DNA of 64,000 nucleotides from Macrostomum lignano. Taxonomy: Eukaryota. The position numbers were made by a program, and so were the translations under genes. The stretch is taken from NCBI GenBank assembly GCA_002269645.1, contig NIVC01000106.1, positions 434,001 to 498,000 of the forward strand, read 5' to 3'. Shown here piece by piece: positions 14,407 to 40,255 of this stretch; positions within the stretch are counted from its first letter, which is position 1, and each line of letters opens with the position of its first letter. The notes under the pieces were generated by a model. The model ran no database searches. It had not been told where the DNA came from and saw only the letters and a program-made list of their open reading frames with translations.

Positions 14407-16974
14407 TTACCTTCTTAACTTAAAAATGTTGGCTATTGCCCCAAAAAAGACAGCACGCCTTGTGCGAACAAAACTTGACAGTCGATCAAAAACAAGCTTG
14501 CACTGAAATTGTTCGCAGATTGATAAAACAGACCGACGTGAGCTATCTCTGTCAGTGAGACAGTCTGGTCCGAGCTCGTTCACCAGCCACTCGAGTGATG
14601 AGCTGCTCACAGCATTGAAAGCAGCACAGTGCACTGCAGTCATGTTCTTCCATCCTCTCAGCTTGAAACACTCGACTCCATTCATCTTCTCTTTGATGAG
14701 CTGCATTGATTCCGCCTTCTGGAACTCAGCCGCAATGTGGATGACTGTGTCATTGTTTGCATCTCTGTCAGTGAGACAGTCTGGACCGAGCTCGTTCACC
14801 AGCCACTCGAGTGCTGAGCTGCTCACAGCATTGCCAGCAGCACAGTGCACTGCAGTCGTGTTGCAACTTTCTCTCAGCTGGAAACACTCGACTCCATTCA
14901 TCTTCTCTTTGATGAACTGCATTGATTCCGCCTTCTGGACAGAAGCCGCAATGTGGATGACTGTGCCATTGTCTGCATCTCTGTCAGTGAGACAGTCTGG
15001 TCCGAGCTCGTTCACCAGCCACTCGAGTGCTGAGCTGCTCACAGCATTGCCAGCAGCACAGTGCACTGCAGTCATTTTGTTCATTCTTCTCAGCTTGAAA
15101 CACTCGACTCCATTCATCTTCTCTTTGATGAACTGCATTGATTTCGCCTTCTGGAACTGAGCCGCAATGTGGATGACTGTGTCATTGTCTGCATCTCTGT
15201 CAGTGAGACAGTCTGGTCCGAGCTCGTTCACCAGCCACTCGAGTGCTGAGCTGCTCACAGCATTGCCAGCAGCACAGTGCACTGCAGTCATTTTGTTCAT
15301 TCTTCTCAGCTTGAAACACTCGACTCCATTCATCTTCTCTTTGATGAACTGCATTGATTTCGCCTTCTGGAACGCAGCCGCAACATGAATAACTGTGTCA
15401 CTGTTTGCATTTCTGTCAGTGAGACAACCTCGTCCGAGCTCGTTCACCAGCCACTCGAGTGTTGAGCTGCTCACTTCATTGCAAGCAGCCCAGTGCACTG
15501 TAGTCGTGTTGCAACATCCTCTCAGCTTGAAACACTCGACTCCATTCATCTTCTCTTTGATGAACTGCATTGATTCCGCCTTCTGGAACTGAGCCGCAAT
15601 GTGGATGACTGTGTTATTGTTAGCAGCTCTGTCAGTGAGACAGTCTGGTCCGAGCTCGTTCACCAGCCACTCGAGTGCTGAGCTGCTCACAGCATTAAAA
15701 GCAGCACAGTGCACTGCAGTCATGTTTTGCCTTCCTCTTAGCTTGAAACACTCGACTCCATTCATCTTCTCATTGATGAACTGCATTGATTCCGCCTTCT
15801 GGAACTCAGCCGCAATGTGGATGACTGTGTTATTGAATTGATCTCTGTCAGTGAGACAGTCTGGTCCGAGCTCGTTCACCAGCCACTCGAGTGCTGAGCT
15901 GCTCACAGCATTGCAAGCAGCCCAGTGCACTGCAGTCCTGTTGTTGAATCCTCTCAGCTTGAAACACTCGACTCCATTCATCTTCTCTTTGATAAACTGC
16001 ATTGATTCCGCCCTCTGGAACTCAGCCGCAGTGTGGATGACTGTTAAATGTTTTGCATCTCCGTCAGTGAGACAGTCTGGTCCGAGCTCGTTCACCAGCC
16101 ACTCGAGTGCTGAGCTGCTCACAACATTGCATGCAGCACGGTGCACTGAAGTCATGTTTTGCCTTCCTCTCAGCTTGAAACACTCGACTCCATTCATCTT
16201 CTCTTTGATGAACTGCATTGATTCCGCCTTCTGGAACTGAGCGGCAATGTGGATGACTGTGTCATTGTTTGCATCTCTGTCAGTGAGACAGTCTGGTCCG
16301 AGCTCGTTCACCAGCCACTCGAGTGTTGAGCTGCTCACTTCATTGCAAGCAGCACAATGCACTGCAGTCATGTTGTTAATTCCTCTCAGCTTGAAACACT
16401 CGACTCCATTCATCTTCTCTTTGATGAACTGCATTGATTCCGCCTTCTGGAACTCAGCCGCAGTGTGGATGACTGTGTTATTGTTTGCATCTCTGTCAGT
16501 GAGACAGTCCGCTTCGAGTTCGAACATCAGCCATTGGAATGTCGATCCATGATGTGTGAGATTCTCAGCTGCCCTATGCATCACTGTTTTCTGCCTGCTA
16601 TCTCTTGCTTCGAATGGGTTCCAGTCCGCTTCTGCTGCCTGCAGCTTCTGTTTCAGGAACTCCATCGTCTCCGCAGTCTGACTCTTCGCTGCCAGGTGAG
16701 TCACCGAGTCGCCATCGCTATCAACCAGCCGAAATATGTCGACCCCGTGCCCCATCTCCAGTAATCGAAGAACCGGCAGTCCGTCTCTGTGCCGAGCTGC
16801 AGCAAAAATGACGCCTTTGGCGAAGTCTTCTCCAGGTCCGACGATGCTCTCGGACACCTGGAACAGCAGATCATCAGTCAGCCGTTCGTCTCCGGCTGCT
16901 ACCGCCTGCTTGATCTGCCTAAAGAGATGCTGAGAGGCCTCGTATTCGCTGAACTCGCTGGGACTCAGAGCTCT
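14407..16974 (-). CDS. Ankyrin-repeat protein, large terminal exon (copy 1): divergent N-terminal repeats plus 9 x 72-aa di-ankyrin modules
   Basis: 816-aa ORF with repeated TxxHxAA motifs (TVIHxAA / TAVHxAA) and 216-bp periodicity. The track start at 16857 is GTG. The frame stays open for 39 more codons up to an acceptor-like site (minus strand CTAAT...TTCCGATTTCAG|AGA), so the exon probably starts at 16974 in phase 0. Confidence 0.9.
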   Translation of the reverse strand, partial: RALSPSEFSEYEASQHLFRQIKQAVAAGDERLTDDLLFQVSESIVGPGEDFAKGVIFAAARHRDGLPVLRLLEMGHGVDIFRLVDSDGDSVTHLAAKSQTAETMEFLKQKLQAAEADWNPFEARDSRQKTVMHRAAENLTHHGSTFQWLMFELEADCLTDRDANNNTVIHTAAEFQKAESMQFIKEKMNGVECFKLRGINNMTAVHCAACNEVSSSTLEWLVNELGPDCLTDRDANNDTVIHIAAQFQKAESMQFIKEKMNGVECFKLRGRQNMTSVHRAACNVVSSSALEWLVNELGPDCLTDGDAKHLTVIHTAAEFQRAESMQFIKEKMNGVECFKLRGFNNRTAVHWAACNAVSSSALEWLVNELGPDCLTDRDQFNNTVIHIAAEFQKAESMQFINEKMNGVECFKLRGRQNMTAVHCAAFNAVSSSALEWLVNELGPDCLTDRAANNNTVIHIAAQFQKAESMQFIKEKMNGVECFKLRGCCNTTTVHWAACNEVSSSTLEWLVNELGRGCLTDRNANSDTVIHVAAAFQKAKSMQFIKEKMNGVECFKLRRMNKMTAVHCAAGNAVSSSALEWLVNELGPDCLTDRDADNDTVIHIAAQFQKAKSMQFIKEKMNGVECFKLRRMNKMTAVHCAAGNAVSSSALEWLVNELGPDCLTDRDADNGTVIHIAASVQKAESMQFIKEKMNGVECFQLRESCNTTAVHCAAGNAVSSSALEWLVNELGPDCLTDRDANNDTVIHIAAEFQKAESMQLIKEKMNGVECFKLRGWKNMTAVHCAAFNAVSSSSLEWLVNELGPDCLTDRDSSRRSVLSICEQFQCKLVFDRLSSFVRTRRAVFFGAIANIFKLRR

Positions 16975-17699
16975 CTGAAATCGGAATAGGCAGATAGTTA
17001 TAATTAGTCTAGGGTAATTAAAGGCCTATGATATTGGCTGTGAAACTTAAGGACATATAGGTAAATTGGGAAGGGCAGAGCAGAAACATTTTCGCTCGGT
17101 TCGGTCGTGAGTGTCGTGCTATGTGACTGCAAAGTGGCAGAGCAGTTGTTTTCCGCTATCATGTTGATGGGCTGTGTAACAGGTAGGATTTTGTGTCCTG
17201 CCTGCCTGCACCTTCTGCTCACGTCGGATAACAAAGAATTGAACTCGAAGCACGGTTTTTCTGGGTCCAGGCTGCTGCGGCCTACAGCCCAGCCGAGGCA
17301 ATGGCCATGCCTTTAGGCCCGCAGATGCGGGCGAGAGAAAAGTGAAGCGAGCGCCTCCACTACTGTCTCTCCTTTTATTTAAAACACAGCAGAACAATCG
17401 CGTGGGAACGTAAACTCTTATAGGCTACATAGAACAAAATGCAAATTACGCAGCAAGTTTTAGGTGCAGCCGTCCTTCGCAAATATGACTGCATTCTATG
17501 CAGCTCATAGGCTGCCGTGTCATCACCTGGCAGCCTTTCCGACTTTTTTCGACATGATCTTTGTAGGTAAAGCGCGATATATGAGAAAGCACCATTTCTG
17601 TTTGTCCGTTGCTCAACTTGGTGGTGCCGCTATCTACACTTCCTATCAACGACGTCTACGAGTACTCTCTGCTTCGGCGGGGTGTATGCAGAAACTAGC

Positions 17700-18537
17700 A
17701 GAATTCGCGAGAGACAGCCGATGATATCGCCCTGCTGTCCTTTAACCTCTACGCGACAGGTGGTGCTTGGCATCACCCTTGTTGCCAACGGCTGTGCCGA
17801 AATCGGGACATAGACTATTTGACAGTCGCTACGAACAACTTTGTTAGTTTTCCTAGGAGCCACGTTGAAATCAATCAGACCATGGCCGGGTTCCATTTGA
17901 TTGCCGAACTGCCACATGTCATTGGTGTTATCGACTGCACAAATGTCGCTATCAAGAGTCCAACTAACAATGAGTATGTTTTTGAGAACAGAAAATCGTT
18001 TTATTCTATTAATGTTCAAGCTGTGTGCAGTGTCTCAATGTCATTCACGAACATTCTAGTACGCTGGCCGAGAAGTACACACGATTCTTTCATATTCAAC
18101 AACTCTGCATTAAAGGAGATTCTATCAGAAGTGTTAGTGGCAGTATTCCTCGTCGGTGATAGTGGATATCCTCTGAGACCATTTCTCATGAAGGTTTTCG
18201 ACACTCCAAAAGAGATGCAAGAGAGACCGACTTCAACCGGAGGCTGCGACAAACTCGGGTGAAAATAGAATGTTCATTCGGGATTCTAAAGTCTCGATTT
18301 TAATGCCTGAATCGTCATTCCGCAAGTCTCCGATTCCATCCGAGCAAGTTTTGCTTGATAATAAGCGCCTGTTTTGTGCTGCATAACATTGCGATCAACA
18401 GAGGAGTTCCACTGGTTGTGCCGATCCAGCCTGACATCAATGACGAACCGGAGGATGTTGGCGTCGATGATATTGGAGCTAGAAGAGCCGAGCGAATTCG
18501 CATCGTACATTTGATACAACATGCAAGTAATCAGTAA
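17700..18537 (+). pseudogene. PIF/Harbinger (HARBI1-like) DDE transposase relic, copy 1
   Basis: Motifs HVIGVIDCTNVAI, NRKSFYSINVQAVC, THDS, GDSGYPL, KIECSFGILKSRF and ACFVLHNI. Frameshift near 18230 and TAA at 18301-18303. Confidence 0.9.
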
Positions 18538-19860
18538 AGAGGCCCTGGAGCTGGGCCATTGTGGGCACGAGGTTGGCGGCGCGGTTGTTCCGGATTTCGG
18601 TCTGGAGCTCGAGCGGGAGGCGGTTCCAGAGTGCGTAGACGCGGCTGTCGAGGGTGCACGCGAGCTCACCTAGGCGGAGTAGCTGGCCGGTAGCGAGTCG
18701 GAGGGCGTCGGTGTAATTCTCGAGCTCATCCAAGTCGGAGGCGGAGCTGCAGTGAAGAGCGAAAAGGATCTGGAAGAAGGCGTTTTTCTGCTCCTGGGCA
18801 TCGGCGTAGTTGGCCTGGAGGACGCGGCAGGCTTCGGCGTAGGCGTTGGGCTGGCAAGCGTCGAGGGCGCCAAGCTTCCGGAGTGCCGAGCCAGAGTGAA
18901 GACCGCGGAGCGCCTCAAACTTATCGACGTCGTTGAGACTGGATTGGTCGACGTGGTAGAAGAAGGCGTTCCAGAACCCGGGGAATGCGGTGGGGTCGGT
19001 GCCGTCGAATGTCGGGAGACGAACCTTCTGGAGAACAGTGGAGTGGATTAGAGCGGCCGGATCGCTATCGCTGGTTGCGGACTACGACGCAGATTTCAGG
19101 GCAGGATGGGAATTAGCGGCGAGCTGTTGTATGAGCAGCTGATTCTGCTGCATCATGGCGGTCATAGCGGTCAGGAGGGCGTTGATATCGACGGAGGCAG
19201 CGGGAGCTGCTGCAGGGATCGCAGTTGTGGAAGGAGCAGCGGGAAGAGCAGATGTCGCGGCTGCTGAAGCAGCAGGCGGCGGGTCACTGGCTTTGACGTG
19301 CGGCTGCTCCGCGTCGATTGGCGCTTCAGCAGAGGCTGTGCTGTGGTCGTTCTTGGACTGCTTGATCTGGTCGCCAGATAGGTCAGTTGTTGATCGCGTG
19401 ATAACCATGGTAATCCGGACGCTCTGCTACCAATTTGTAGAATAGATTCGTCGAGGAAGAGAGAGGAACCACGCTCTGCTACCAATTTGTGGAAGTTGAC
19501 AATAAACTAATATTGAACGAGCGGTTAGCGGGGAAGGAATCAGTAGAAGAGAAGCAGAGGTGAAGGGCAGAAGCCGCGAGTTGAACTTGTATTTGTACTA
19601 ACACAGCGAACAGGGTAGCTGAAATGTCTGTGGCAAATTAACGGTTATGCTAGTCTGTGGGAAAAGCGTGGTAGACGAAGGGAGCCAGCTAACTGAAAAG
19701 TACGAGTCTTTATTGCAAAACAGAAAGTAGAAATATTTGAAGGATGAAATCGCCAAGACCTCGAATTTGACAAACTTGCTCGGATAGCTAATGAAGTCAG
19801 TGTTGCTGCCTGCAAGATAGGTGAAGAATTTCTACTTTCTAGACAAGCAGGTCATTAACA
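18538..19860 (-). mobile_element. BEL/Pao-type LTR retrotransposon 5' fragment (putative LTR 19488-19860, tRNA-iMet PBS, truncated gag)
   Basis: The gag from ATG 19408 has KVRLPTFDG..FWNAF...DKFEALRGL...AYAEA..VLQANY (DUF1759-like), with a premature stop at 19082-19084. PBS TGGTAGCAGAGCGTGGTT lies at 19484-19467. The LTR limits (TGTT...CACA) are tentative. Confidence 0.8.
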
Positions 19861-22135
19861 TGGAACTCTATCGCATCGCAGAACTGACACGGTGTCTTCG
19901 GCTGCGTCGACGGTCTCGCCCTGCTGTTATCAACTACAACAACAACTGTTCTCAACTAGTGATGAGGCGCTAACGAATGATGCTCGCCAATGGTGCCTCA
20001 TTCCTTTGGTTATTGCGCTTGTACTTTGCTTCCACAGCTTCTACTTAATAATTAATAATTAATAATAATTAATAACTAATAATATAACTACTTAATAATA
20101 ATAAGTCAAAGACTTTCTGCCACCCAGCTCAGCCTCAGACACTTCGAGATGTTAAATCAGCAAGCAGTGCGACTTGATGAAATATTGGCTTTCATGCTGA
20201 CCTGACATCCTTGATGCTGGATGCCATCAGAGTCCCATAACCATTTAAATATCTCGCTCGAGTGCAGGAAGGAAAGTCGCGTTGCAAGAACAGGCACTCC
20301 AGGAAAGCTTGAATAAATAAGCAACGCAATAATTGTACTTTATATCGACAATCATTTATTTATTTTGGATAAACGCAATAAAATATACTTATTATCAGTC
20401 AATGGGGTAGTGGGTGCATAATGTACAGAGACACAGCTTAATGATATTACGAGCTAAGTCGTAACCAAGTTACCAAGAACACAGGTGAGTCAACAATGAC
20501 TAAACGCATCCAGTCTTAGCGCGTTCATACGCTGGTGTGACATGCTGAACTTCTCAACACTTCTTGCAAGTCGCTCAGGCAACAGCCGAATGGTTGACAT
20601 ATGATGTCATGTGATCGCCCTTGCGGATCATGCAGGTCTGAAATGCTGCGACTCCGAGACGTCTCAAAGCGCCACTGAAATTCTTGTCATTGTCAACTTC
20701 GCGGCAGCTGTTGAGTACATCGCGCATAACACAAAAAACAGAGACTGCGGCATGACTCTCAGCCAAAGATGCAAAAATTACATTTCGTAATATTGCAGAG
20801 GGTGGACCCAAGTATAAGTACAAAGCCTAACAAAAAACTGCTTAGTTTTTTAATCTGAAAAATGGATTCAGATTACCTGATCACTATGAGAATCCGTGTA
20901 TTTAATAATGGCAATTATGCCGAATTTACGTAAAAATAAAAGTACACAACTTTGATGCTTTTATTACTGTAGAGATGAGGTATTAAAAGAGCAAAGTGCA
21001 CATTTTATGGATCAATTATGGAATAAGCTGAGTCGGCTGAGTCGCTTCATCAAACTGGCGCAGGCGCGGCTGTGAATGTTTTGTCAAAGTCTGCCGCAAT
21101 CATCGAGCAAACAAACTTTAAGTGACGCAACAGCGCGTCAGCGCTGGCAAAAGTGCGCAATAAAATTCAGTAAATTTTGCACTGCGTTCAAAACGGAGCA
21201 GCGAATTAAAGGCTCCCGCCTTCGCCAGTGCGCGGTTGCGAGAGCGACTGCTGTTCTCAGGCTCTCAGGCTACAGCAGCCTGGCCAATTATCGTGAAGGA
21301 AGGGATGACGGCAGGCAGGGAGGGGAGCAAGACTGGAGGATTGCGGTGATATTAAAGGTCAAACCTGAGCAAGATCTAATGAGTTTTGATTGCTTTGTAG
21401 AGGTTCATTCATTGAATGTTACTGTAAGTAGAACAATGCACACATTCGAAGCAAAACTTGAACTTCGTTAAGTTAAACTTAAACGTTACGCTCCAAAGAT
21501 CTTACGCTTGCTGGAGCAGCTAAGCGAGGCTACATCTCTGAGGGAAATAAATACTTTTCGGTAAGCCTTTGTTCGAGTCTTCGTTATTTGATTATTGAGA
21601 GCGATTTTATTGCCGGCCATTACTGATCAGTTGAATTACTGAGTTAATTGATTTTGATACCCTAGAGTAACCGATAGGGGCACACGACTCCGATTCGGTT
21701 ATTTCTAGAAGAAGACGCCCTTTCTGAAGGACGTCGTTATTGCTATGAAGTTGACTTTGTTATTAGGGCGCATCTCTGATAATTGACTTCTGCACTCGAG
21801 AAATTCTTCGACGTCGACGGATTAAATTGTAACGCGCTCACATTCGGCCGATTTTTAGAATTCAAGAAGACTACTCCGGAGGAAGACTCCATAGAAGACT
21901 ACGAGCCCTACGAACCTGCCCGACAAAGAAGAGGAGCCCGCACCCGTGAGTGATCACTGAATTTTGTTCCCAGGCTTAAGGTCTGGAAGTGAGAGTTTTC
22001 GGGTGACTGATCACCACCCGATTAAACTCTTCAGCTTGATGGCTTGATAATTTTGATAGTTCTTGTAGATAAATGCAAATTTTCAATTTCTACAGCACGG
22101 CAAACACAATAGACAGCCAGCTGCTTAGTACTCAC

Positions 22136-22238
22136 CTCAGCCATGGAGCTGCTCGAGTGCCTTCGGCTGCTCAAGGGCGGCTGAGTCGCTGCCGAGGTGC
22201 TGACAGAGCTGATGTGCTGCGCTGAGTTTGAGATGCGT
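22136..22238 (-). other. Candidate upstream exon (start ATG-GCT-GAG, M-A-E) for ankyrin gene copy 1
   Basis: Minus strand shows acceptor TCCATTCTCAG| at 22239, a 103-nt exon ending ...TCC ATG GCT GAG|GTGAGT (ATG 22144-22142, donor 22135). The phase-0 donor matches the phase-0 acceptor at 16974. Inference only, with no transcript evidence. Confidence 0.45.
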
Positions 22239-22278
22239 CTGAGAATGGAGGCGGGACTTACGATGACGGTGGTGTACA

Positions 22279-22717
<439 letters not shown>

Positions 22718-23545
22718 GGCACTCACCGGTTACTATTTGTGAACTGTGCTGTGAGGATTCAGAAGCAAAACAGTAAAGTTATGCCTGTGGCTTCTCTGCT
22801 CCAAAAAGCCAATGCAGTCTAAAAAAATTCTCGAGTATGCCTGAGGCCGATGTGAGCTGACGCGCTCCAAGAGGCCCCTTCTGCATCTCTTAAAGAGAAG
22901 CTCGAAACGAAGAAAGGCAGAAAAGAAGGCAGACAGAGAGAGCTGCAAGCAGATGGAGAACAATAGCGAGCTCAGCATCCATGCCCGCCTCTGTGCACCC
23001 AGCCTGATGAAGCTACTGTATTGAATTGAGCTGAACTGTTTTCAGATGCTCGGACAGGTAAAGGGCTGCCACTGCACTCATACGGTCTTGAGCATAGAGA
23101 CAGCTCTCTAGCCCCCTATGCTGTTGCTGGGCAGCTCAGACCCCAACCTCACAGAGGTGGAATCGAGCTCGGAGACGGAGTGCTGGGGAAGGCGGGGACC
23201 CCAAAGGTATTGAACTGAATGGTCAATTGAAATGACAGCAGTGCACAGTTTTAAAGCACAGTTGCACAGTTTAAATTTTGTACAAGCGATTCGGTAAGAC
23301 TTCGGTAAGAGAGTGTTTTCATATTTGAAAAAATGTCGAAAACGCTGCTTGCTATTCTTGCTCTAGAGAAGTGTGCTGGCTGTCTAATGGTGGGTGCGTT
23401 AGATAAGGGGCAAGGGGCTGCAGGTCGGGAATGCAGGTTTTCTGTTAGATCACAACTAAGGTCCTTACAGTACATTTTCATGTAATGACTCGCTAAAGTA
23501 AAAAAGTAATGAATAGTCCCTACGGTCAGAATCAGGAATCAGAAT

Positions 23546-26500
23546 TAGGGATCAGGATTGGGGATCTGGATTGGGGATCAGGATTAAGGATCAGGATTGG
23601 GGATCAGGATTGGGGATCAGGATTGAGGATCAGGATTGGGGATCAGGATTGGGGATCAGGATTGGGGATCAGGATTGGGGATCAGGATTGGGGATCAGGA
23701 TTGGGGATCAGGATTGGGGATCAGGATTGGGGATCAGGATTGGGGATCAGGATTGGGGATCAGGATTGGGGATCAGGATTGGGGATCAGGATTGGGGATC
23801 AGGATTGGGGATCAGGATTGGGGATCAGGATTGGGGATCAGGATTGGGGATCAGGATTGGGGATCAGGATAGACTATCAGGATAGACTATCAGGATTGGG
23901 TATCTGGATTGGGGATTAGGATTGGGTATCAGGATTGGGGATCAGGATTGGGGATCAGGATTGGGGATCAGGATTGGGGATCAGGATTGGGGATCAGGAT
24001 TGGGGATCAGGATTGGGAATCAGGATTGGGGATCAGGATTGGGGATCAGGATTGGGGATCAGGATTGGGGATCAGGATTGGGGATCAGAATTGGGGATCA
24101 GGATTGGGGATCAGGATTGGGGATCAGGATTGGGGATCAGGATTGGGGATCAGGATTGGGGATCAGGATTGGGGATTAGGATTGGGGATCAGGATTGGCG
24201 ATCAGGATTGGGGATCAGAATTGGGGATCAGGATTGGGGATCAGGATTGGGGATCAGGATTGGGGATCAGGATTGGGGATCAGGATTGGGGATCAGGATT
24301 GGGGATCAGGATTGAAGATCAGGATTGGGGATCAGGATAGACTATCCGGATAGACTATCGGGATAGACTATCAGGATTGGGGATCTGGATTGGGGATTAG
24401 GATTGGGTATCAGGATTGGGGATCAGGATTGGGGATCAGGATTGGGGATCAGGATTGGGGATCAGGATTGGGGATCAGGATTGGGGATCAGGATTGGGGA
24501 TCAGGATTGGGGATCAGGATTGGGGATCAGGATTGGGGATCAGGATTGGGGATGGAGATTGAGGATCAGGATTGGGGATCAGGATTGGGGATCAGGATTG
24601 GGGATGGAGATTGAGGATCAGGATTGGGGATGGAGATTGAGGATCAGGATTGGGGATGGAGATTGAGAATCAGGATTGGGGATCAGGATTGGGGATCAGG
24701 ATTGGGGATCAGGATTGGGGATCAGGATTGGGGATCTGGATTTTGGGATTAGGATTGGGGATCAAGATTGGGGATCAGGATTGGGGATCAGGATTGGGGA
24801 TCAGGATTGGGGATCAGGATAGACTATCAGGATAGACTATCAGGATTGGGTATCTGGATTGGGGATCTGGATTGGGGATTAGGATTGGGTATCAGGATTG
24901 GGGATCAGGATTGGGGATCAGGATTGGGGATCAGGATTGGGGATCAGGATAGACTATCAGGATTGGGGATCAGGATTGGGGATCAGGATTGGGAATCAGG
25001 ATTGGGGATCAGGATTGGGGATCAGGATTGGGGATCAGGATTGGGGATCAGGATTGGGGATCAGGATTGGGGATCAGGATTAAAGATCAGGATTGGGGAT
25101 CAGGATTGGGGATCAGGATTGGGGATCAGGATTGGGGATCAGGATTGGGGATCAGGATTGGGGATCAGGATTGGGGATCAGGATTGGGGATCAGGATTGG
25201 GGATCAGGATTGGGGATCAGGATTGGGGATCAGGATTGGGGATCAGGATTGGGGATCAGGATTGAAGATCAGGATTGGGGATCAGGATAGACTATCAGGA
25301 TAGACTATCAGGATAGACTATCAGGATAGACTATCAGGATAGACTATCAGGATAGACTATCAGGATAGAAAATCAGGATTGGGGATCTGGATTGGGGATT
25401 AGGATTGGGTATCAGGATTGGGGATCAGGATTGGGGATCAGGATTGGGGATCAGGATTGGGGATCAGGATTGGGGATCAGGATTGGGGATCAGGATTGGG
25501 GATCAGGATTGGGGATCAGGATTGGGGATCAGGATTGGGGATCCGGATTGGGGATCAGGATTGGGGATCAGGATTGGGGATCAGGATTAGGGATCAGGAT
25601 TGGGGATCAGGATTGGGGATCAGAATTGGGGATCAGGACTGGGGATCAGGATTGGGGATCAGGATTGGGGATCAGGATTGGGGATCAGGATTGAAGATCA
25701 GGATTGGGGATCAGGATAGACTATCAGGATAGACTATCAGGATAGACTATCAGGATAGACTATCAGGATAGACTATCAGGATAGACTATCAGGATAGACA
25801 ATCAGGATTGGGGATCTGGATTGGGGATTAGGATTGGGTATCAGGATTGGGGATCAGGATTGGGGATCAGGATTGGGGATCAGGATTGGGGATCAGGAGT
25901 GGGGATCAGGATTGGGGATCAGGATTGGGGATCAGGATTGGGGATCAGGATTGGGGATCAGGATTGGGGATCAGGATTGGGGATCAGAATTGGGGATCAG
26001 GATTGGGGATCAGAATTGGGGATCAGAATTGGGGATCAGGACTGGGGATCAGGATTGGGGATCAGGATTGGGGATCAGGATTGGGGATCAGGATTGAAGA
26101 TCTGGATTGGGGATCAGGATAGACTATCAGGATAGACTATCAGGATAGACTATCAGGATAGACTATCAGGATAGACTATCAGGATAGACTATCAGAATAG
26201 TCTATCAGGATAGACTATCAGGATTGGGGATCTGGATTGGGGATTAGGATTGGGTATCAGGATTGGGGATCAGAATTGGGGATCAGGATTGGGGATCAGG
26301 ATTGGGGATCAGGATTGAGGATCAGGATGGACTTTTAGGATAGACTATCAGGATTGGGGATCTGGATTGGGGATTAGGATTGGGGATCAGGATTGGGGAT
26401 CAGGATTGAAGATAAGGATTGGGGATCAGGATAGACTATCAGGATAGACTATCAGGATAGACTATCAGGATTGACTATCAGGATAGACAATCAGGATTGG

Positions 26501-28676: not shown

Positions 28677-29844
28677 CAAGGACTACTTAAGAACACAGGA
28701 CGTTACACTTGCAAATATTGGCAGAATTCTAAAAGGCCGCTTTGAATGCATGTGTCTATGGTTTTAGTGGCCTTTTTGCTTAGTAATTCGCATCGCAGCG
28801 TAGCATGATACTCATAACCCATAAGTCTACGTTAGAGCACCAAGCAGACAAGATCGCAAACAGCTCACTTTATTGTGTTCTCTGGATCTTTTATTTCTTT
28901 CTTCAAATTAAATTATCAATTGAGTTATACAAGATGCCGACGAAGTGTTGCGTTCCAGGCTGCACAAGCAACTACAAAAGTGGTAAAAGGTGCACCGTAT
29001 ATACTTTTCCGAAACAAGAGGCTGAAATTGACTCCTGGATGAAGGCTTTGCGGTTATGTCTCGTACAAGGAAAATTTGTCCGGGAAAAGCACCGAGGCAT
29101 ATGCTACAGACAACAGCTGTGAGTTCACAAAGTTGGTGTCTCGCGGAAAATTGAGTCATCCGCCAGAATGGCTTGTTGTGTATGCTAGTTTCTGCTACGT
29201 CTTCTTTCTCGGCTCCGGACAGCGTTGCGTTAACAGTTCAGTTAATGTGTTTCTGAGAATTTTCGACTCTTTTTTGGATATTGCACTTGGCAACGAGCTA
29301 CTTATAAGAATATCTCGCCGGTTTGCAAATTCCTTTTACAAGGGTTTAGTAAGAAAGGAATCTGAAACTGAGAGACATCAAAGCGGTGTTGGTGCAAGAC
29401 GGTTACGAAAATTAAACTCCGGTTAACTTTGTGACGAATTTATTACTATTTTCACTGTCATCTTTGCTACCATCGTGTTGCTTCTACATTTTAAACAAGT
29501 CCATGAATCGGGATATGAGCGAATAAGTATTATTATTGTTGACCAAGTGTAGTTTCTATCATTCAATATTGTCATTCTTGTTATTTTTGGGTATTTCTTC
29601 GTTTTTTGTTAAACTTCTACACCCTGTTCACGATCACCTTTTGGAGAAAATATAAATATTTTGTCGGTGTACATGCATATAAAAAGCTTTATTTACTAGG
29701 CTTTAATTTCTATTCATGTATTATACACATTGCTTCAAATAGCAAAAAGGCCACTAAAACCATAGACACATGCATTCAAAGCGGCCTTTTAGAATTCTGC
29801 CAATATTTGCAAGTGTAACGTTCTGTGTTCTTAAGTAGTCCTTG
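28677..29844 (+). mobile_element. Non-autonomous P-element-like DNA transposon (THAP N-terminus fused to transposase C-terminus)
   Basis: 104-bp TIRs (28677-28780 and 29741-29844, 1 mismatch) starting CAAGG, and 8-bp TSD GCCAGCAA. MPTKCCVPGCTSNY...YTFPK...W from 28934 is THAP-like. CGYVSYK...SRGKLSHP...RRFANSF follows from about 29049 in another frame. Confidence 0.88.
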
Positions 29845-30393: not shown

Positions 30394-30395
<2 letters not shown>

Positions 30396-34139: not shown

Positions 34140-35142
34140 GTTGGTTATTCGTAAATGAGACTTTAGGATAATAGTCCGGCTCATGAGTGCGCGCTATGAG
34201 GACTATTATCCTAAAGTCTCACTTACGAATAACCGCATTGTCGAATTTCAGTGGGGCCATAGACAAAAAGGGCATCGAAAGGAGAGAGGGGTTACCGAGG
34301 AGAGAGAGACATAAAGACTGAGGTGGTTTACTGGAGTTTGGGCCATAGACAACGAAGTTGCAAACAGGCTGGGGGTTAAGAGGGTGGAAAGGAAGGAGAT
34401 GTGGAGAGAAAGAGAGATTAAAACGTAAATAGCTACATTCGCTTGGCCATGGAGAACCAGACGTCATATCCGATCAACTGGGGCAATCTGCCTGTCGAAA
34501 GTTTAGCCAACGTATCTAGCAGCGAACTCAATTGGATCTCAATACTTTCCACATCTCAGAAGGACATGAAGGATAACGAAGACTTTTTGAACTTCTTGCA
34601 CTTTCTTGAGACCTGGAATCGGCTGGGCATTCGATGAGCGAGATCATGGCTATCACGGGTCAAAAGTCCGAGAGCACGGTCCGGCGCTACCTGGCAGTTA
34701 AACGGGACAAGTCCCTGCAACAATGCAGCGATGCAGTGTCGCGTGCGTTGAACATGGGACAAAGCGCCGCGACCCACGGTCAAGTAACAATGCCTACTGA
34801 CATCAGCATCCAAAGTTCCATCGTGCAAGAAGCAGTGAGCGTGTCTGATGGTCGTCAGATGAACGGTCGGAATATCTTTATTATGAACAACTGCACTTTC
34901 AACAATTGCAATCTGTAATGGTCTTCGGCACTATGACAATTGCGCCATATTGATACTGCACAATTAACTTTCCATAGCGCTAATCTTTTGTTGTTGGTGT
35001 TTGCTGTTTTGTTCTAAAAATAGGTGTCCATTATCCCGAGTTTGAAATCATTATCCTGAAGTTTAAGTGAAAAAATAAATAAATGTGCTCATGGTTTAAC
35101 CATAGACGATTGCATTATCCTAAAGGCTGATTTTTGACAATG
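34140..35142 (+). mobile_element. Crypton-like (tyrosine recombinase) internally deleted element
   Basis: 1003-bp insertion absent from copies 1 and 3, bounded by a direct AATG repeat with no TIRs. It encodes LESAGHSMSEIMAITGQKSESTVRRY (tyrosine-recombinase box II ending at Tyr 34688-34690) and a C-terminal NNCTFNNC. It also has a 35-bp-arm hairpin at the left end. Confidence 0.72.
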
Positions 35143-37687
35143 AAGCTGAACTTGTGCTAAACGGCTCTGTTTTGTTTCAAACTGCTTTCTGTCTGCGTAG
35201 CAATGGATAAATAATCAGCGGTCCCAGTGTCGTGCTGCGACCGCTGATTATTTGCATTGTTATGCTGCTTGATCATCCTACAAACAATGCATTGTTAGTA
35301 GTAATATATTGTTCTGCATAAAAATGTAAATAATGATCGTCAAATTGCTAGACAATGAATGGAGGCTTCACGTGCGACAGATTTTGTAGCTATTTTGAGG
35401 AATTCGTGTAGAAAGACATCACCACAAGTTTCGATTTTGAATTACAAAATGTACATTTCATGTATCTGAATTGCGTGTATCTGCAAGTTCAGCTTATTTC
35501 ATTTTTATATTTATTAGTCGATTTTCGTTGCAAAAATACTTTCGGCTCATATCTGTGCAGCGAGAAAATTACATATCATTTGCAGCTTAAAATTGGAGGA
35601 GCATAATACGGCATGTGCATCTACTTGTACGAGTACTATGTGAAATTATGTTGTGTATGAACGAGTATATAGTGTGCCAGGATTCCAAGAGTGAACTGAG
35701 TGTAAAAGTGTGAGTGTGAGAGAGACAGTGAGAAAGTGAGTGTGAGGGAGTGAGTGAAAAAGTGAATGAGTGAGTGAGTGTGAGAGAGTGAGTGTGAGAG
35801 AGTGAGGGTTAGTTAAATTTCCAACACAATTCAATTTACAATAAAATTCAACTTACAATAAAGTTCTATTTCCAAAACAAGTAAACATAAAAACACTTCA
35901 ATTTCATACAATACAAAAACCGGCGGGTTTTTGTATTTTTGGGTCCAGTTGGTTTTCAAACCTTCATCAGTCACCTGAGCAAAAGTGCCTGTCTGGGCGA
36001 AGTTTTAAGGGCACTTTTTCTAATCCAGCCATTGGCCGATGTCAGGGACTCTGTCCGAGATATCAATAATTGAATAGCGACGCATGCAGGAGGGGGGATA
36101 TTTCTGCGTATGGGAATTCTTAATCACTTTGATTATTTATAAAACATAAAATACAGGGACATACATACAACAAAACAATTTTTATGGAAGCAATCATGCT
36201 AGCTACTGGCTCCGGTTTAAGACGGGTTTTAAGATCAGAAAGCCAAATTCATATAGAGAGAAATAGCTATAGCTAGCTAATTAGAAAATATAGGAAATCA
36301 GCACTTGCTTAATAATAATAACGCTGAAGTGCTTGATAAAATGTCCATAATTGGGTCATTTTGGGAGATTTATAAATTGAATAACATAAGGGAGAGTTCC
36401 GCCTCCGCCAGCGTACGCCACTATAGCTATATACATTCAATATCGAGCAAAATATTATTTAAACATATTGTGACCAACATAGCTGAATCCCACACATAAA
36501 CAAACCCAAAAAAGGAGAATATCGTAAAACCTAAGTTAAATCTATTAGTTAAAATTTGATAATGCAAGGCTTAGCTATTGTGAGGAAACTCAAGGGGTCA
36601 GAAGTCTCAACAATTGAATGACAGAATTCAATGTGTAGGCAAGGGTGAACTATTAAGATACCAGTAAAGCTAAATAACAGTTAATAACAACTAATTCACT
36701 AGGATTGGCAATTTGATTCCATTAGCTACACGAAAACGAAGCACAAAAAAGCCCACAGGAAAGCAAATTCACTTGGTTAAACTGAGTATCGATGAAATGA
36801 GAAATATGATTATGGATCATGCTAAAGCAAATGAATGTAACATAAAATAAGAGATATCAATATCAATTTAAAGCCAAAAACTGACTTCAAACTTAAAACA
36901 GGGTTTAATCATGGAGGAAAGAATCTATTCATGGCTTTAATATGTTATCAAATAATTCTTCATAGGTTTCGACAGTTCTCAAAAAAATCAGGCAAAGGAA
37001 AATGTGAGAATTACAATATTCTAATTAACTCACTTCTAAATTAATACTCTGTAACCATTATTTAGTAGTAAAATCGATTTAACTAATAAAACAAAAAGGA
37101 TAAAAAAATCAGCATTTAAAAGTCCACTTCAGTAGCATTTATTGGTATCCCACAGAATGCAACTACTCGTATTACTACGAGTAACACAAACAGGATTAGC
37201 AATGTCAATAAACTGATCAGCATTTAAAGGTTCTATTTATCAGCATTTTGCAGTCGCTACGAGTATACATAAACCACAGAAAATACACAGAAAAGTTAGT
37301 CAGCTCTCTCGCACAGAACCTGCTGATGTAGCAAGTTTGCTTTATACCTCTTTTAATTGATTAGGAGACATGCTTATACCACGAGCTAACAAAGAATAGC
37401 AGTTGAAGTCGCATGGTGGTTTACCAATAGCTATAACAATTATTTAAGTTTTCTAACAAATTTACTAGAATACTCGCAATTTTACCAGATGTATCTCATC
37501 CTTGATTTTCAAAAGAAATAATTTCGAACTCACTTGTTTCAAGCCAGTTTAAAGCTAGTTTTAGTAACCAACTTAAACAACCAACCATTCCATGCATTAT
37601 TCTGTGGTACTACCATGACATTGACAATATTAACAACAGAAACTTCCAGAACAAGGTACCGTCTGTTGCCTTGCCTATGGCCTAAAA

Positions 37688-40255
37688 TTACCTTCTTAAC
37701 TTAAAAATGTTGGCTATTGCCCCAAAAAAGACAGCACGCCTTGAGCGAACAAAACTTGACAGTCGATCAAAAACAAGCTTGCACTGAAATTGTTCGCAGA
37801 TTGATAAAACAGACCGACGTGAGCTATCTCTGTCAGTGAGACAGTCTGGTCCGAGCTCGTTCACCAGCCACTCGAGTGCTGAGCTGCTCACAGCATTGAA
37901 AGCAGCACAGTGCACTGCTGTCATGTTCTTCCATCCTCTCAGCTTGAAACACTCGACTCCATTCATCTTCTCTTTGATGAACTGCATTGATTCCGCCTTC
38001 TGGAACTCAGCCGCAATGTGGATGACTGTGTCATTGTTTGCATCTCTGTCAGTGAGACAGTCTGGACCGAGCTCGTTCACCAGCCACTCGAGTGCTGAGC
38101 TGCTCACAGCATTGCCAGCAGCCCAGTGCACTGCAGTCCTGTTGATCATTCCTCTCAGCTTGAAACACTCGACTCCATTCATCTTCTCTTTGATGAACTG
38201 CATTGATTCTGCCTTCTGGACAGAAGCCGCAATGTGGATGACCGTCAAGTTATCTGCATCTTTATCAGTGAGACAGTCTGGTCCGAGCTCGTTCACCAGC
38301 CACTCGAGTGCTGAGCTGCTCACAGCATTGCCAGCAGCACAGTGCACTGCAGTCATTTTGTTCATTCTTCTCAGCTTGAAACACTCGACTCCATTCATCT
38401 TCTCTTTGATGAACTGCATTGATTTCGCCTTCTGGAACGCAGCCGCAACGTGAATAACTGTGTCACTGTTTGCATTTCTGTCAGTGAGACAACCTCGTCC
38501 GAGCTCGTTCACCAGCCACTCGAGTGCTGAGCTGCTCACTTCATTGCAAGCAGCCCAGTGCACTGTAGTCGTGTTGCAACATCCTCTCAGCTTGAAACAC
38601 TCGACTCCATTCATCTTCTCTTTGATGAACTGCATTGATTCCGCCTTCTGGAACTCAGCCGCAATGTGGATGACTGTGTTATTGTTAGCAGCTCTGTCAG
38701 TGAGACAGTCTGGTCCGAGCTCGTTCACCAGCCACTCGAGTGCTGAGCTGCTCACAGCATTAAAAGCAGCACAGTGCACTGCAGTCTTGTTTTGCCTTCC
38801 TCTTAGCTTGAAACACTCGACTCCATTCATCTTCTCATTGATGAACTGCATTGATTCCGCCTTCTGGAACTGAGCCGCTATGTGGATGACTGTGTTATTG
38901 AATTGATCTCTGTCAGTGAGACAGTCTGGTCCGAGCTTGTTCACCAGCCACTCGAGTGCTGAGCTGCTCACAGCATTGCAAGCAGCCCAGTGCACTGCAG
39001 TCCTGTTGTTGAATCCTCTCAGCTTGAAACACTCGACTCCATTCATCTTCTCTTTGATGAACTGCATTGATTCCGCCTTCTGGAACTCAGCCGCAATGTG
39101 GATGACTGTGTCATTGTCTGCATCTCTGTCAGTGAGACAGTCTGGTCCGAGCTCGTTCACCAGCCACTCGAGTGCTGAGCTGCTCACAGCATTGCAAGCA
39201 GCCCAGTGCACTGCAGTCCTGTTGTTGAATCCTCTCAGCTTGAAACACTCGACTCCATTCATCTTCTCTTTGATGAACTGCATTGATTCCGCCCTCTGGA
39301 ACTCAGCCGCAGTGTGGATGACTGTTAAATTTTTTGTATCTCCGTCAGTGAGACAGTCTGTTCCGAGCTCGTTCACCAGCCACTCGAGTGCTGAGCTGCT
39401 CACAGCATTGCATGCAGCACGGTGCACTGAAGTCATGTTTTGCCTTCCTCTCAGCTTAAAACACTCGACTCCATTCATCTTCTCTTTGATGAACTGCATT
39501 GATTCCGCCTTCTGAAACTGAGCCGCAATGTGGATGACTGTGTCATTGTTTGCATCTCTGTCAGTGAGACAGTCTGGTCCGAGCTCGTTCACCAGCCACT
39601 CGAGTGTTGAGCTGCTCACTTCATTGCAAGCAGCACAATGCACTGCAGTCATGTTGTTAATTCCTCTCAGCTTGAAACACTCGACTCCATTCATCTTCTC
39701 TTTGATGAACTGCATTGATTCCGCCTTCTGGAACTCAGCCGCAGTGTGGATGACTGTGTTATTGTTAGCATCTCTGTCAGTGAGACAGTCCGCTTCGAGT
39801 TCGAACATCAGCCATTGGAATGTCGATCCATGATCTGTGAGATTCTCTGCTGCCCTATGCATCACTGTTTTCTGCCTGCTATCTCTTGCTTCGAATGGGT
39901 TCCAGTCCGCTTCTACTGCCTGCAGCTTCTGTTTCAGGAACTCCATCGTCTCCGCAGTCTGACTCTTTGCTGCCAGGTGAGTCACCGAGTCGCCATCGCT
40001 ATCAACCAGCCGAAATATGTCGACCCCGTGCCCCATCTCCAGTAATCGAAGAACCGGCAGTCCGTCTCTGTCCCGAGCTGCAGCAAAAATGACGCCTTTG
40101 GCGAAGTCTTCTCCAGGTCCGACGATGCTCTCGGACACCTGGAACAGCAGATCATCAGTGAGCTGTTCGTCTCCGTCTGCTACTGCTTGATGGATCTGCC
40201 TATAGAGATGCTGGGATGCCTCGTATTCGCTGGACTCGCTGGGACTCAGAGCTCT
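37688..40255 (-). CDS. Ankyrin-repeat protein, large terminal exon (copy 2), 9 x 72-aa modules
   Basis: 816-aa ORF 37688-40138 plus 39 open codons up to the same acceptor (CAG at 40258-40256). No stops or frameshifts. Confidence 0.9.
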   Translation of the reverse strand, partial: RALSPSESSEYEASQHLYRQIHQAVADGDEQLTDDLLFQVSESIVGPGEDFAKGVIFAAARDRDGLPVLRLLEMGHGVDIFRLVDSDGDSVTHLAAKSQTAETMEFLKQKLQAVEADWNPFEARDSRQKTVMHRAAENLTDHGSTFQWLMFELEADCLTDRDANNNTVIHTAAEFQKAESMQFIKEKMNGVECFKLRGINNMTAVHCAACNEVSSSTLEWLVNELGPDCLTDRDANNDTVIHIAAQFQKAESMQFIKEKMNGVECFKLRGRQNMTSVHRAACNAVSSSALEWLVNELGTDCLTDGDTKNLTVIHTAAEFQRAESMQFIKEKMNGVECFKLRGFNNRTAVHWAACNAVSSSALEWLVNELGPDCLTDRDADNDTVIHIAAEFQKAESMQFIKEKMNGVECFKLRGFNNRTAVHWAACNAVSSSALEWLVNKLGPDCLTDRDQFNNTVIHIAAQFQKAESMQFINEKMNGVECFKLRGRQNKTAVHCAAFNAVSSSALEWLVNELGPDCLTDRAANNNTVIHIAAEFQKAESMQFIKEKMNGVECFKLRGCCNTTTVHWAACNEVSSSALEWLVNELGRGCLTDRNANSDTVIHVAAAFQKAKSMQFIKEKMNGVECFKLRRMNKMTAVHCAAGNAVSSSALEWLVNELGPDCLTDKDADNLTVIHIAASVQKAESMQFIKEKMNGVECFKLRGMINRTAVHWAAGNAVSSSALEWLVNELGPDCLTDRDANNDTVIHIAAEFQKAESMQFIKEKMNGVECFKLRGWKNMTAVHCAAFNAVSSSALEWLVNELGPDCLTDRDSSRRSVLSICEQFQCKLVFDRLSSFVRSRRAVFFGAIANIFKLRR

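What the first reader, a model, noticed from the sequence alone, without database searches (positions are those of the whole stretch)
14407..40255. Ankyrin repeats with invariant framework and hypervariable binding positions: a natural DARPin-like recognition repertoire
Seen: each gene has nine 216-bp modules. The framework stretches (SMQFIKEKMNGVECFKLR, LEWLVNELGPDCLTD) are almost invariant even at DNA level. A few codons vary by multi-base, non-conservative changes: the beta-turn loop before the second TxxH (GIN, GRQ, GFN, GCC, RMN, ESC, GWK, GMI), the loop before the first (ANNN, AKHL, QFNN, ADNG, TKNL) and the inner-helix HxAAx positions (C/R/W; C/F/G; E/Q/A/S). Established: these are the concave-face positions randomised in designed ankyrin proteins (DxxGxTPLHLAAxx). 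High internal conservation with hypervariable contact codons is also the signature of fungal NLR sensor repeats such as the Podospora HNWD WD40 repeats. Inference: this is a tandemly amplified, diversifying non-self or ligand sensor family in an invertebrate, possibly undescribed.
Basis: partly seen in the sequence, partly recalled or inferred. Interest (0 to 1): 0.88.

Follow-up and report, generated by a model that had tools for sequence, protein, structure and literature searches.

The report
Flatworm hypervariable ankyrin-repeat recognition genes
Two neighbouring genes of the flatworm Macrostomum lignano encode proteins built from nine near-identical double ankyrin repeats that differ almost only at the ligand-contacting positions. 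These positions are under diversifying selection, and relatives carry the same kind of array fused to a caspase or a kinase, so this looks like a rapidly evolving intracellular recognition family not yet described in animals.

Summary
Two 855-codon, intron-less reading frames on the minus strand (14407-16974 and 37688-40255) each hold nine in-frame 216-bp modules, each module being two 36-residue ankyrin repeats. Modules are 91% identical in DNA. The window is Macrostomum lignano: an older assembly's gene model matches gene A over 669 residues with one difference.

Variation sits at the canonical ankyrin binding positions. For 12 codons chosen beforehand from the literature, pN/pS is 3.5, against 0.47 for the other 60. 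A site-model test gives LRT 34.3, above all 35 neutral simulations run with extreme recombination. The two copies share seven modules at about 1.2% divergence and differ by half-module chimeras, so unequal exchange reshuffles the array.

The same signature recurs in paralogues on other contigs: an ankyrin-caspase gene (LRT 50.6) and an ankyrin-kinase gene (LRT 51.6). Their arrays are 93% identical to each other despite the different effector domains.

Best reading: a lineage-specific family of cytosolic recognition proteins that works like fungal NLR repeat sensors but has no NOD domain. Not shown here: transcription, the ligand, and any role in immunity or non-self recognition. The sequences are public but uncharacterised. 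Novelty: new variant of a known kind.

The parts
14407..16974 (-). Gene A: 855 codons plus stop, no intron and no in-frame ATG. It encodes about 21 ankyrin repeats and nothing else.
   Evidence: ORF and translation. Pfam Ank_2 E=7e-49. AF2 pLDDT 88, a continuous ankyrin solenoid. Foldseek top hits are ankyrin-1, AnkB and NOMPC. Identical over 669 aa, bar one residue, to M. lignano model P0157.
14554..16497 (-). Array A: nine 216-bp modules A1-A9. Each is two 36-residue ankyrin repeats.
   Evidence: TRF, module table, tblastn module coordinates. Mean pairwise DNA identity 91%.
16498..16974 (-). N-terminal cap plus a diverged 'module 0' that escaped homogenisation.
   Evidence: Aligns to the N-terminus of paralogue P0001 from residue 5. 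A versus B pN/pS is 0.37 here.
16975..16980 (-). tttcag splice acceptor immediately before the first codon of gene A. It is a candidate spliced-leader trans-splice site, where the leader would supply the ATG.
   Evidence: Sequence. The M. lignano spliced leader ends in ATG (PMC8629364). The step is inferred, not shown.
37688..40255 (-). Gene B: tandem paralogue of gene A with the same length and architecture.
   Evidence: Outside the shuffled modules, pN/pS against gene A is 0.32-0.44.
37835..39778 (-). Array B: nine modules B1-B9. Seven are orthologous to A modules. B4 and B8 are unique.
40256..40261 (-). tttcag acceptor of gene B.
   Evidence: upstream 30 nt printed.
22133..22237 (-). Alternative candidate 5' exon with an ATG (..SSSSMAE..), about 5 kb upstream of gene A. 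It is used in the older M. lignano gene model P0014.
   Evidence: tblastn of the P0014 N-terminus, 97% identity.
45029..45136 (-). The same candidate 5' exon upstream of gene B.
   Evidence: 94% identity.
1161..1268 (-). A third copy of that exon at the left edge of the window. It implies a further gene copy beyond the window.
   Evidence: 86% identity. The unit repeats at 666-1760, 21635-22709 and 44534-45756.
12466..21700 (.). Duplicated unit around gene A. Its partner is 35697-44599, and the gene-to-gene offset is 23281 bp.
   Evidence: blastn: 17507-21700 versus 40448-44599 is 98.7-98.8% identical. 13335-17174 versus 36624-40455 is 95.8%, lowered by the shuffled modules.
35697..44599 (.). 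Duplicated unit around gene B.

Best explanation
The window is Macrostomum lignano DNA. It carries two tandem copies, probably of at least three, of an intron-less gene for a cytosolic protein of about 856 residues made only of about 21 ankyrin repeats.

Shown here:
- Eighteen of the repeats form nine 72-residue double-repeat modules, kept 91% identical in DNA by recent amplification or gene conversion.
- The residues at the beta-hairpin tips and on the inner helix, which form the ligand-binding groove, are driven apart by diversifying selection.
- Modules and half-modules are reshuffled by unequal exchange within and between copies.
- The same mode of evolution operates in paralogues whose arrays are fused to a caspase or to an STE-type kinase.

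Inferred mechanism:
- The long groove binds variable, probably extended protein ligands.
- New specificities arise by point change at about ten codons per module, plus module shuffling and gene duplication.
- In the fused paralogues, binding would be read out by the caspase or kinase.
- The ankyrin-only proteins of this window act as stand-alone binders, adaptors or decoys in the same system.
- The selective driver is most likely some form of conflict: pathogens, selfish elements or conspecific non-self.
For: Anatomy.

Ankyrin identity and fold.

Organism: P0014 and P0157 are M. lignano entries that match the window genes.

Selection in the window genes:
- Whole-module pN/pS is 0.8-1.2.
- At 12 codons fixed beforehand (DARPin positions 2, 3, 5, 13, 14, 33; PMC1261162), pN/pS is 3.5 (bootstrap 2.0-6.1), against 0.47 elsewhere. 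No random set of 12 codons out of 100000 reaches this.
- A conservative count that scores each multi-base change as one event gives a ratio of 2.0, p=0.009.
- M1a/M2a LRT is 34.3, with omega 4.7 at 22% of sites. The signal holds in each half-module, in each gene alone and in a non-redundant set.
- It exceeds all 35 neutral simulations run with extreme recombination, whose maximum was 18.2.

Shuffling:
- A6 and A7 differ only in codons 3-15.
- B4 combines an A7-like first half with the B3 second half.
- Seven orthologous module pairs differ by 1-5 nt, the same divergence as the 98.7-98.8% identical flanks.

Both copies are constrained: pN/pS is 0.32-0.44 outside the shuffled modules.

Family replicates:
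- Ankyrin-caspase BOX15_Mlig032136g1: 10 modules, 92.6% identical, LRT 50.6, selected columns 5, 7, 15, 16, 40, 41, 43, 48, 51.
- Ankyrin-kinase BOX15_Mlig023755g1: LRT 51.6, selected columns 40, 41, 43, 48, 51. Its array is 93.4% identical in DNA to the caspase gene's array.
- Effector domains confirmed by Pfam and PDB searches.
Against: - No transcript, protein or ligand evidence could be obtained here.
- Neither copy has an in-frame ATG. The start depends either on an inferred trans-spliced leader or on an exon 5 kb upstream.
- The locus is embedded in satellites and transposon debris.
- The codon models are my own implementation with a fixed NJ tree. Recombination inflates the test: 11 of 35 neutral simulations passed the nominal threshold.
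- Synonymous diversity is higher at the hypervariable codons. With local pS the ratio falls to about 1.5-1.9.
- The 18 recent A-versus-B differences in orthologous modules give a ratio of only 0.32.
- Placement on the concave face rests on alignment and secondary structure. No coordinates were available.
- No NOD, TIR or death domain was found in any relative scanned.
Confidence: 0.6

Rival explanations
1. Recent tandem amplification plus ordinary relaxed constraint. Surface positions of ankyrin repeats are the most tolerant anywhere, so they simply drift faster, and there is no adaptive diversification.
For: Across all natural ankyrin repeats the same positions are the most variable (PMC1261162). 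The diverged M. lignano paralogues show this too: entropy 2.75 against 1.65. The recent A-versus-B differences give a ratio of 0.32.
Against: Drift cannot push dN above dS. The pre-specified codons give 3.5 (2.0 by the conservative event count). The site test beats all neutral simulations, and two independent paralogues give LRTs above 50 with omega of 17 or more at the same columns.
Confidence: 0.08
2. Real diversifying selection, but not immune or non-self sensing. The ankyrin-only proteins would be regulators or decoys that co-evolve with endogenous partners, for example the ankyrin-caspase and ankyrin-kinase paralogues, reproductive proteins in this sexually conflicted hermaphrodite, or transposons.
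For: The window genes have no effector domain. The family is large and confined to M. lignano among the hits: all 35 hits. The locus is transposon-rich.
Against: Nothing here separates this from pathogen sensing. The caspase and STE-kinase fusions fit a sensor-plus-effector logic but do not identify what is sensed.
Confidence: 0.25
3. Assembly artefact or dead genes. The arrays would be collapsed or chimeric long-read assemblies, or pseudogenes in repeat-rich DNA.
For: There is no ATG. The region is satellite- and transposon-rich. The M. lignano genome is a hidden polyploid (PMC10468722). The older model P0157 is chimeric with transposon sequence.
Against: Both 2.5-kb frames are open with no indels in the arrays. 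Seven modules agree between copies at the flank divergence. An independent assembly gives the same module order A1-A8 with one substitution. The framework is under purifying selection: omega 0.03-0.19 for 45-74% of sites.
Confidence: 0.04
4. A targeted mutational mechanism produces the variation without selection, such as diversity-generating retroelement-like mutagenesis or local hypermutation.
For: Reverse-transcriptase ORFs lie nearby. Asn codons are common at the variable loops.
Against: The reverse transcriptases are retrotransposon fragments. No template copy of the module exists outside the two arrays. Changes start from all four bases with no adenine bias: G>T 12, A>T 10, C>A 5. The same codons vary in unlinked paralogues.
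Confidence: 0.02

Closest known systems
Fungal NLR sensor repeats with high internal conservation (Podospora HNWD WD40; NACHT-ANK such as Pa_3_8560; Dyrka et al. 2014, PMC4986451)
   Same: Near-identical tandem repeats. Positive selection confined to a few positions on the binding surface (inner helices and hairpin of ANK). Repeat shuffling within and between paralogues. The same repeat type combined with different effector domains.
   Different: Animal, not fungal. No NACHT/NB-ARC domain. The unit is a double ankyrin repeat of 72 residues. Effectors are C-terminal (caspase or STE-type kinase) or absent. No shared ancestry beyond the ankyrin fold is implied.
Designed ankyrin repeat proteins (DARPins)
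   Same: A constant framework with variation at positions 2, 3, 5, 13, 14 (and 33). 10 of these 12 codons vary here and they carry 57% of non-synonymous change.
   Different: Natural. Two alternating 36-residue repeat types instead of one 33-residue consensus. Extra strongly selected sites at position 10 (HxAA), plus weaker ones at positions 15 and 20. 18 variable repeats rather than 2-3.
Platyhelminth ANK-caspases (PMC11463336)
   Same: [quoted passage not shown] The caspase domain is closest to caspase-8 and caspase-3.
   Different: The window genes have no caspase domain. The near-identical, hypervariable array was not described for ANK-caspases, and that paper treats them as unique to parasitic flatworms.
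PRDM9-type zinc-finger arrays (from my own knowledge, not tested here)
   Same: An animal example of a minisatellite-like coding array with a homogenised framework and positively selected contact residues.
   Different: Different fold, different ligand (DNA), single gene. A functional analogy only.
Ankyrin-R/B 24-repeat membrane-binding domain, NOMPC
   Same: Best structural matches: a long continuous ankyrin solenoid whose inner groove binds extended peptides.
   Different: 14-16% identity. Those repeats are individually diverged and conserved across species, with no homogenisation or hypervariability.

Membership tests
Ankyrin repeat superfamily | Match to the Pfam ankyrin models above the gathering score | tested here: met
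   Ank_2 E=7e-49, 164.8 bits against a cutoff of 27.3, 10 stretches.
Ankyrin repeat superfamily | Helix-turn-helix plus beta-hairpin solenoid fold with a T-x-x-H...A-A motif | tested here: met
   AF2 pLDDT 88.3 with the expected secondary-structure pattern. Foldseek E=7e-26 to ankyrin-1 and AnkB. TVIH/TAVH aligns with TPLH in PDB hits.
Fungal-type high-internal-conservation sensor repeats | Repeats about 85% or more identical to one another | tested here: met
   Mean pairwise DNA identity 91% (86-96%). Protein identity to module A1 is 82-90% among distinct modules.
Fungal-type high-internal-conservation sensor repeats | Positive selection limited to binding-surface positions | tested here: met
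   Replicated in two paralogues. The surface assignment is by alignment, not by coordinates.
Fungal-type high-internal-conservation sensor repeats | Repeat shuffling and repeat-number variation | tested here: met
   Half-module chimeras A7 and B4 and different module content in the two copies. Both window genes have 9 modules, but the number varies among ankyrin-caspase paralogues or alleles: at least 11, at least 5, and 4.
NLR / STAND receptors | Central NACHT or NB-ARC nucleotide-binding domain | tested here: not met
   Pfam finds only ankyrin models in the window proteins, and ankyrin plus kinase or caspase in the relatives scanned.
DARPin-like library architecture | Variation restricted to positions 2, 3, 5, 13, 14, 33 of an otherwise fixed repeat | tested here: inconclusive
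   10 of 12 such codons vary (Fisher p=6e-4), but position 10 (columns 12 and 48) and columns 53 and 58 also vary or are selected.
DARPin-like library architecture | Single 33-residue consensus repeat | tested here: not met
   Two alternating 36-residue repeat types form a 72-residue unit.
Platyhelminth ANK-caspases | Caspase (Peptidase_C14) domain after the ankyrin pro-domain | tested here: not met
   No significant caspase match anywhere in the window: tblastn finds only E=0.8 hits inside the ankyrin region. It is present in paralogues P0013, P0166, P0167 and P0169.
Ankyrin-kinase paralogues of M. lignano | C-terminal protein kinase domain | tested here: not met
   No kinase hit in the window by tblastn. 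It is present in P0008, P0012, P0016 and P0168.
Diversity-generating retroelements | Template repeat next to a dedicated reverse transcriptase, with adenine-specific changes | tested here: not met
   No extra module copy in the window. No adenine bias. The reverse-transcriptase ORFs are RVT_1 retrotransposon fragments repeated in the duplication units.
Expressed, trans-spliced M. lignano gene | Spliced-leader or RNA-seq reads at the tttcag acceptor | not testable with these tools
   Only indirect evidence: an acceptor directly before codon 1 and a spliced leader that ends in ATG.

The most novel reading that the evidence does not exclude
Macrostomum lignano has a large, lineage-specific class of intracellular receptors that need no NOD domain. 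In it, a homogenised but hypervariable double-ankyrin array is the sensor, and it is wired directly to a caspase, to an STE-type kinase, or to nothing. The class would function in non-self recognition (pathogen, virus or transposon, or conspecific). It would be an animal counterpart of fungal high-internal-conservation NLR sensors, and possibly a replacement for the FADD/DED-caspase pathway that flatworms have lost.
Probability: 0.35. Interest if true: 0.88.

Novelty: new variant of a known kind. Interest (0 to 1): 0.7.

Why it matters
Repeat sensors that combine concerted evolution with diversifying selection are a hallmark of fungal NLRs. In the library searches made here, no paper described ankyrin arrays of this kind in an animal.

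Here the signature is found three times over in one flatworm. It occurs on ankyrin-only, caspase-fused and kinase-fused proteins, and arrays are shared between genes with different effectors. That points to a modular recognition system built on a different chassis from NLRs, TLRs or lamprey VLRs.

Platyhelminths are reported to have lost FADD and DED caspases (PMC11463336). A caspase whose pro-domain is a hypervariable binder suggests a direct route from ligand recognition to cell death.

M. lignano is an established laboratory model, so the hypothesis could be tested experimentally. The arrays are also a natural library of ankyrin binders with framework and variable positions already sorted by selection.

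Tried and rejected
- Exact look-up of the window protein in public assemblies found nothing on record. No population or allele comparison was possible beyond the two older M. lignano models.
- Kinase, caspase and spliced-leader RNA searches in the window found none. No effector exon lies downstream, although the stop codon sits in AG|GTAAT.
- The DGR-like mutagenesis idea, prompted by nearby reverse transcriptases and Asn-rich loops, was rejected: no template copy and no adenine bias.
- The first simulation run timed out. It was repeated with 35 replicates.
- The M0 optimiser in my codon code is sloppy and sometimes stays near its start values. Restarts changed M0 but left the M1a/M2a LRT unchanged at 50.6.
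- Literature searches for Macrostomum plus ankyrin, high internal conservation plus ankyrin, concerted evolution plus ankyrin, and the gene identifiers returned no description of this family.
- The paralogue P0001 locus in M. lignano is a single gene with diverged modules, not a tandem cluster.
Full report
WHAT IS THERE

Tandem Repeats Finder reports two arrays of period 216 bp, 9.1 copies, 90-91% matches and no indels, at 14545-16509 and 37826-39790. Each lies in an 816-aa ORF on the minus strand. The translations show a 120-residue N-terminal part, nine 72-residue modules and a 48-residue tail.

Pfam finds only ankyrin models (Ank_2 E=7e-49). Each module is two 36-residue ankyrin repeats. 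TVIH and TAVH align with the canonical TPLH of solved ankyrin proteins.

An AlphaFold2 model built with eight family sequences has mean pLDDT 88.3 and pTM 0.71. It shows an unbroken helix-turn-helix/hairpin solenoid. Its best PDB matches are the 24-repeat domains of ankyrin-1 and AnkB, then NOMPC, latrotoxins and DARPins.

GENE MODEL

The frame stays open upstream of the listed GTG, back to a tttcag acceptor, with no ATG in frame. That gives 855 codons at 14407-16974 and 37688-40255. The extra 39 residues align with the N-terminus of a paralogue.

The M. lignano spliced leader ends in ATG (PMC8629364) and is conserved in the genus (PMC10468722). A trans-spliced start is therefore plausible, but it is inferred. 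An older gene model instead uses an ATG exon that I find once per duplication unit, about 5 kb upstream: 22133-22237, 45029-45136, and also 1161-1268. The last of these implies a further copy left of the window.

There is no signal peptide-like N-terminus, and no kinase or caspase domain in the window.

ORGANISM AND PRIOR RECORDS

The exhaustive representative search returned a 227-aa M. lignano UniRef entry, 98% identical to gene A. It differs from gene B at only 2 positions. Its cluster mate is a 1760-aa chimeric model. That model contains gene A with modules A1-A8 in the same order, identical over 669 residues except G670D at hypervariable column 7.

So the window is Macrostomum lignano. 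An independent assembly confirms the array. The short entry is a mosaic of copies A and B, which points to a third haplotype or copy. The sequences are public but annotated only as ankyrin-repeat proteins. No paper in the library mentions them or the pattern.

DUPLICATION AND SHUFFLING

The two genes sit 23281 bp apart in a tandem unit of roughly 21-23 kb that also holds satellites and transposon fragments. Flanks are 98.7-98.8% identical.

Seven module pairs are orthologous, with 1-5 differences per 216 nt, the same divergence as the flanks. A7, A8, B4 and B8 are unique.
- A7 equals A6 except for nine differences, all in codons 3-15.
- B4 is an A7-like first half joined to the B3 second half.

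Half-module exchange, not point mutation, is therefore the main difference between the copies. Outside these modules, pN/pS between copies is 0.32-0.44, so both are constrained.

IS THE VARIATION SELECTED?

Whole-module pN/pS among modules is 0.8-1.2, which is very high for a folded domain.

To avoid choosing sites after the fact, I fixed 12 codons beforehand. These are repeat positions 2, 3, 5, 13, 14 and 33 of each repeat, the positions randomised in DARPins and identified as ligand-contacting (PMC1261162). I mapped them by the TxxH anchor.
- Ten of the 12 vary in amino acid, against 17 of the other 60 (p=6e-4).
- Their pN is 0.306 against pS 0.087 for the whole module. The ratio is 3.5 (bootstrap 2.0-6.1). 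The remaining codons give 0.47.
- None of 100000 random 12-codon sets reaches this pN.
- Counting every multi-base change as one event, without a tree, still gives a ratio of 2.0 (p=0.009).

My own GY94 site-model code gives M1a versus M2a LRT 34.3, with omega 4.7 at 22% of sites. Sites with posterior above 0.9 are columns 4, 5, 7, 15, 40, 41, 43, 48, 51 and 58. The signal persists in each half-module with its own tree (LRT 8.5 and 24.0), in each gene alone and in a non-redundant set.

Neutral simulations with extreme recombination do inflate the test: 11 of 35 exceed 5.99. Their maximum is 18.2, below the observed value.

Caveats:
- Synonymous diversity is higher at the hypervariable codons and piles up in module codons 1-13. 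With local pS the ratio is about 1.5-1.9, and part of the first-hairpin diversity travels as older cassettes.
- The few recent A-versus-B differences give no evidence of ω above 1.

WHERE THE SITES LIE

In the model's secondary structure, columns 2-8 form the first beta-hairpin and columns 9-16 the first inner helix. Columns 39-44 form the second loop and columns 45-50 the second inner helix.

The selected columns are therefore hairpin tips and inner-helix positions, the canonical ankyrin binding groove. Column 48 (and column 12) is repeat position 10, the x of HxAA. It is not a DARPin position but lies one helical turn before positions 13/14.

FAMILY CONTEXT

All close relatives are M. lignano proteins. 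They share the 72-residue module. In diverged paralogues the same pre-specified positions are the most variable: entropy 2.75 against 1.65, p=4e-4.

Many relatives end in a protein kinase domain closest to STE20-like kinases and MAP3K2/5. Several end in a caspase domain with an intact QACRG motif, closest to caspase-8 and caspase-3.

High internal conservation is not unique to the window.
- Ankyrin-caspase BOX15_Mlig032136g1 has at least 11 modules. Ten clean ones are 92.6% identical in DNA. There are 19 non-synonymous events in the 12 pre-specified codons, 5 in the other 58, and 7 synonymous events in all (p=4e-4). LRT is 50.6 with omega 17. Selected columns are 5, 7, 15, 16, 40, 41, 43, 48 and 51.
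- Ankyrin-kinase BOX15_Mlig023755g1 carries the same array type. LRT is 51.6 and the event test gives p=0.001. Selected columns are 40, 41, 43, 48 and 51. Its modules are 93.4% identical in DNA to those of the caspase gene on another contig, as similar as modules within one gene.
- Module number differs among the caspase paralogues or alleles.

INTERPRETATION

Shown:
- a homogenised double-ankyrin array;
- diversifying selection at the binding positions;
- module shuffling;
- tandem gene duplication;
- the same mode of evolution in arrays attached to a caspase, a kinase or nothing.

Inferred: the arrays are recognition surfaces for variable ligands. The fused effectors read out binding. The ankyrin-only proteins of this window act as stand-alone binders, adaptors or decoys. 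The driver is some form of conflict.

The nearest known system in how it works is the fungal NLR repeat domain with high internal conservation. There, ANK, TPR and WD repeats show the same combination, and the selected ANK sites also map to the inner helices and hairpin (PMC4986451). It is not a member of that family, because no NOD domain exists here.

ANK-caspases are known in flatworms, but they were described as unique to parasitic species and without this array property (PMC11463336).

REJECTED ALTERNATIVES
- Plain relaxed constraint is rejected because omega exceeds 1 in three loci.
- Assembly artefact or pseudogene is rejected because the frames are open, there are no indels, an independent assembly agrees, and the framework is under purifying selection.
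- Retroelement-style targeted mutagenesis is rejected because there is no template and no adenine bias.

VERDICT

The sensor or non-self function remains a well-motivated hypothesis. This is a new variant of a known kind, in a tractable animal.

Noticed in passing
L002 (NIVC01003147.1:1-9728), gene at 3-3728; also proteins P0013, P0167, P0169: M. lignano, a free-living flatworm, has caspases whose pro-domain is an array of at least 11 near-identical double-ankyrin modules. A recent survey (PMC11463336) describes ANK-caspases as unique to parasitic flatworms.
   Followed up: yes
L003 (NIVC01000934.1, reversed 109233-119494) versus L002: An ankyrin-kinase gene and an ankyrin-caspase gene on different contigs carry arrays 93.4% identical in DNA (maximum 97.2%). 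This means either concerted evolution between genes or a very recent swap of effector domains.
   Followed up: partly
window 23538-28522; also 6407-7286 and 58818-59632: A 13-bp minisatellite, ATCAGGATTGGGG, reaches 384 copies (5 kb) in one duplication unit but only about 65 copies in the others.
   Followed up: no
window 1310-5552; 22279-22681; 45178-45756; 57353-57963: ACAG microsatellites range from 0.4 kb to 4.2 kb at the same place in each unit, next to the candidate 5' exon of the ankyrin genes.
   Followed up: no
window 46886-55640: A nested satellite, reported by Tandem Repeats Finder with periods of 68, about 238, about 376 and about 474 bp, occupies 8.7 kb of the third unit only.
   Followed up: no
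window 9353-10618(-), 61640-62977(-), 17819-18262(+), 28805-29122(+), 41663-42358(-): Transposon debris surrounds the genes: RVT_1 reverse-transcriptase ORFs, a DDE_Tnp_4 (PIF/Harbinger-type) transposase fragment, a THAP-domain ORF and a weak gag-like DUF1759 match.
   Followed up: partly
module codons 1-13 of both arrays (for example A6 versus A7, window about 15202-15633): Synonymous variants among modules cluster in the first 13 codons. The first hairpin and helix start appears to be exchanged as an older cassette. The second hypervariable patch (codons 39-53) has almost no linked synonymous change.
   Followed up: partly
hypervariable columns 40, 41, 48, 51 of the window modules: Cysteine is unusually frequent at the selected positions of what should be a cytosolic protein: 10 of 18 at column 48, 9 of 18 at column 51, and a CC pair in A5/B6. 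The paralogues also use Cys, Trp, Phe, Tyr and Arg there.
   Followed up: no
window 14407-14412 and 37688-37693: The TAA stop of both genes lies in AAG|GTAAT, a plausible 5' splice site. No downstream effector exon was found in the window, so read-through by splicing is unlikely but not excluded.
   Followed up: partly
window 17174-17507: About 330 bp is present upstream of gene A and absent from the otherwise 98.7% identical unit of gene B.
   Followed up: no
proteins P0020/P0161 (Kangiellaceae MAG, 5.1-kb contig): A protein filed under a marine bacterial metagenome bin is 33% identical to the window protein and matches the same double-ankyrin module. It may be eukaryotic contamination or a transfer.
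   Followed up: no
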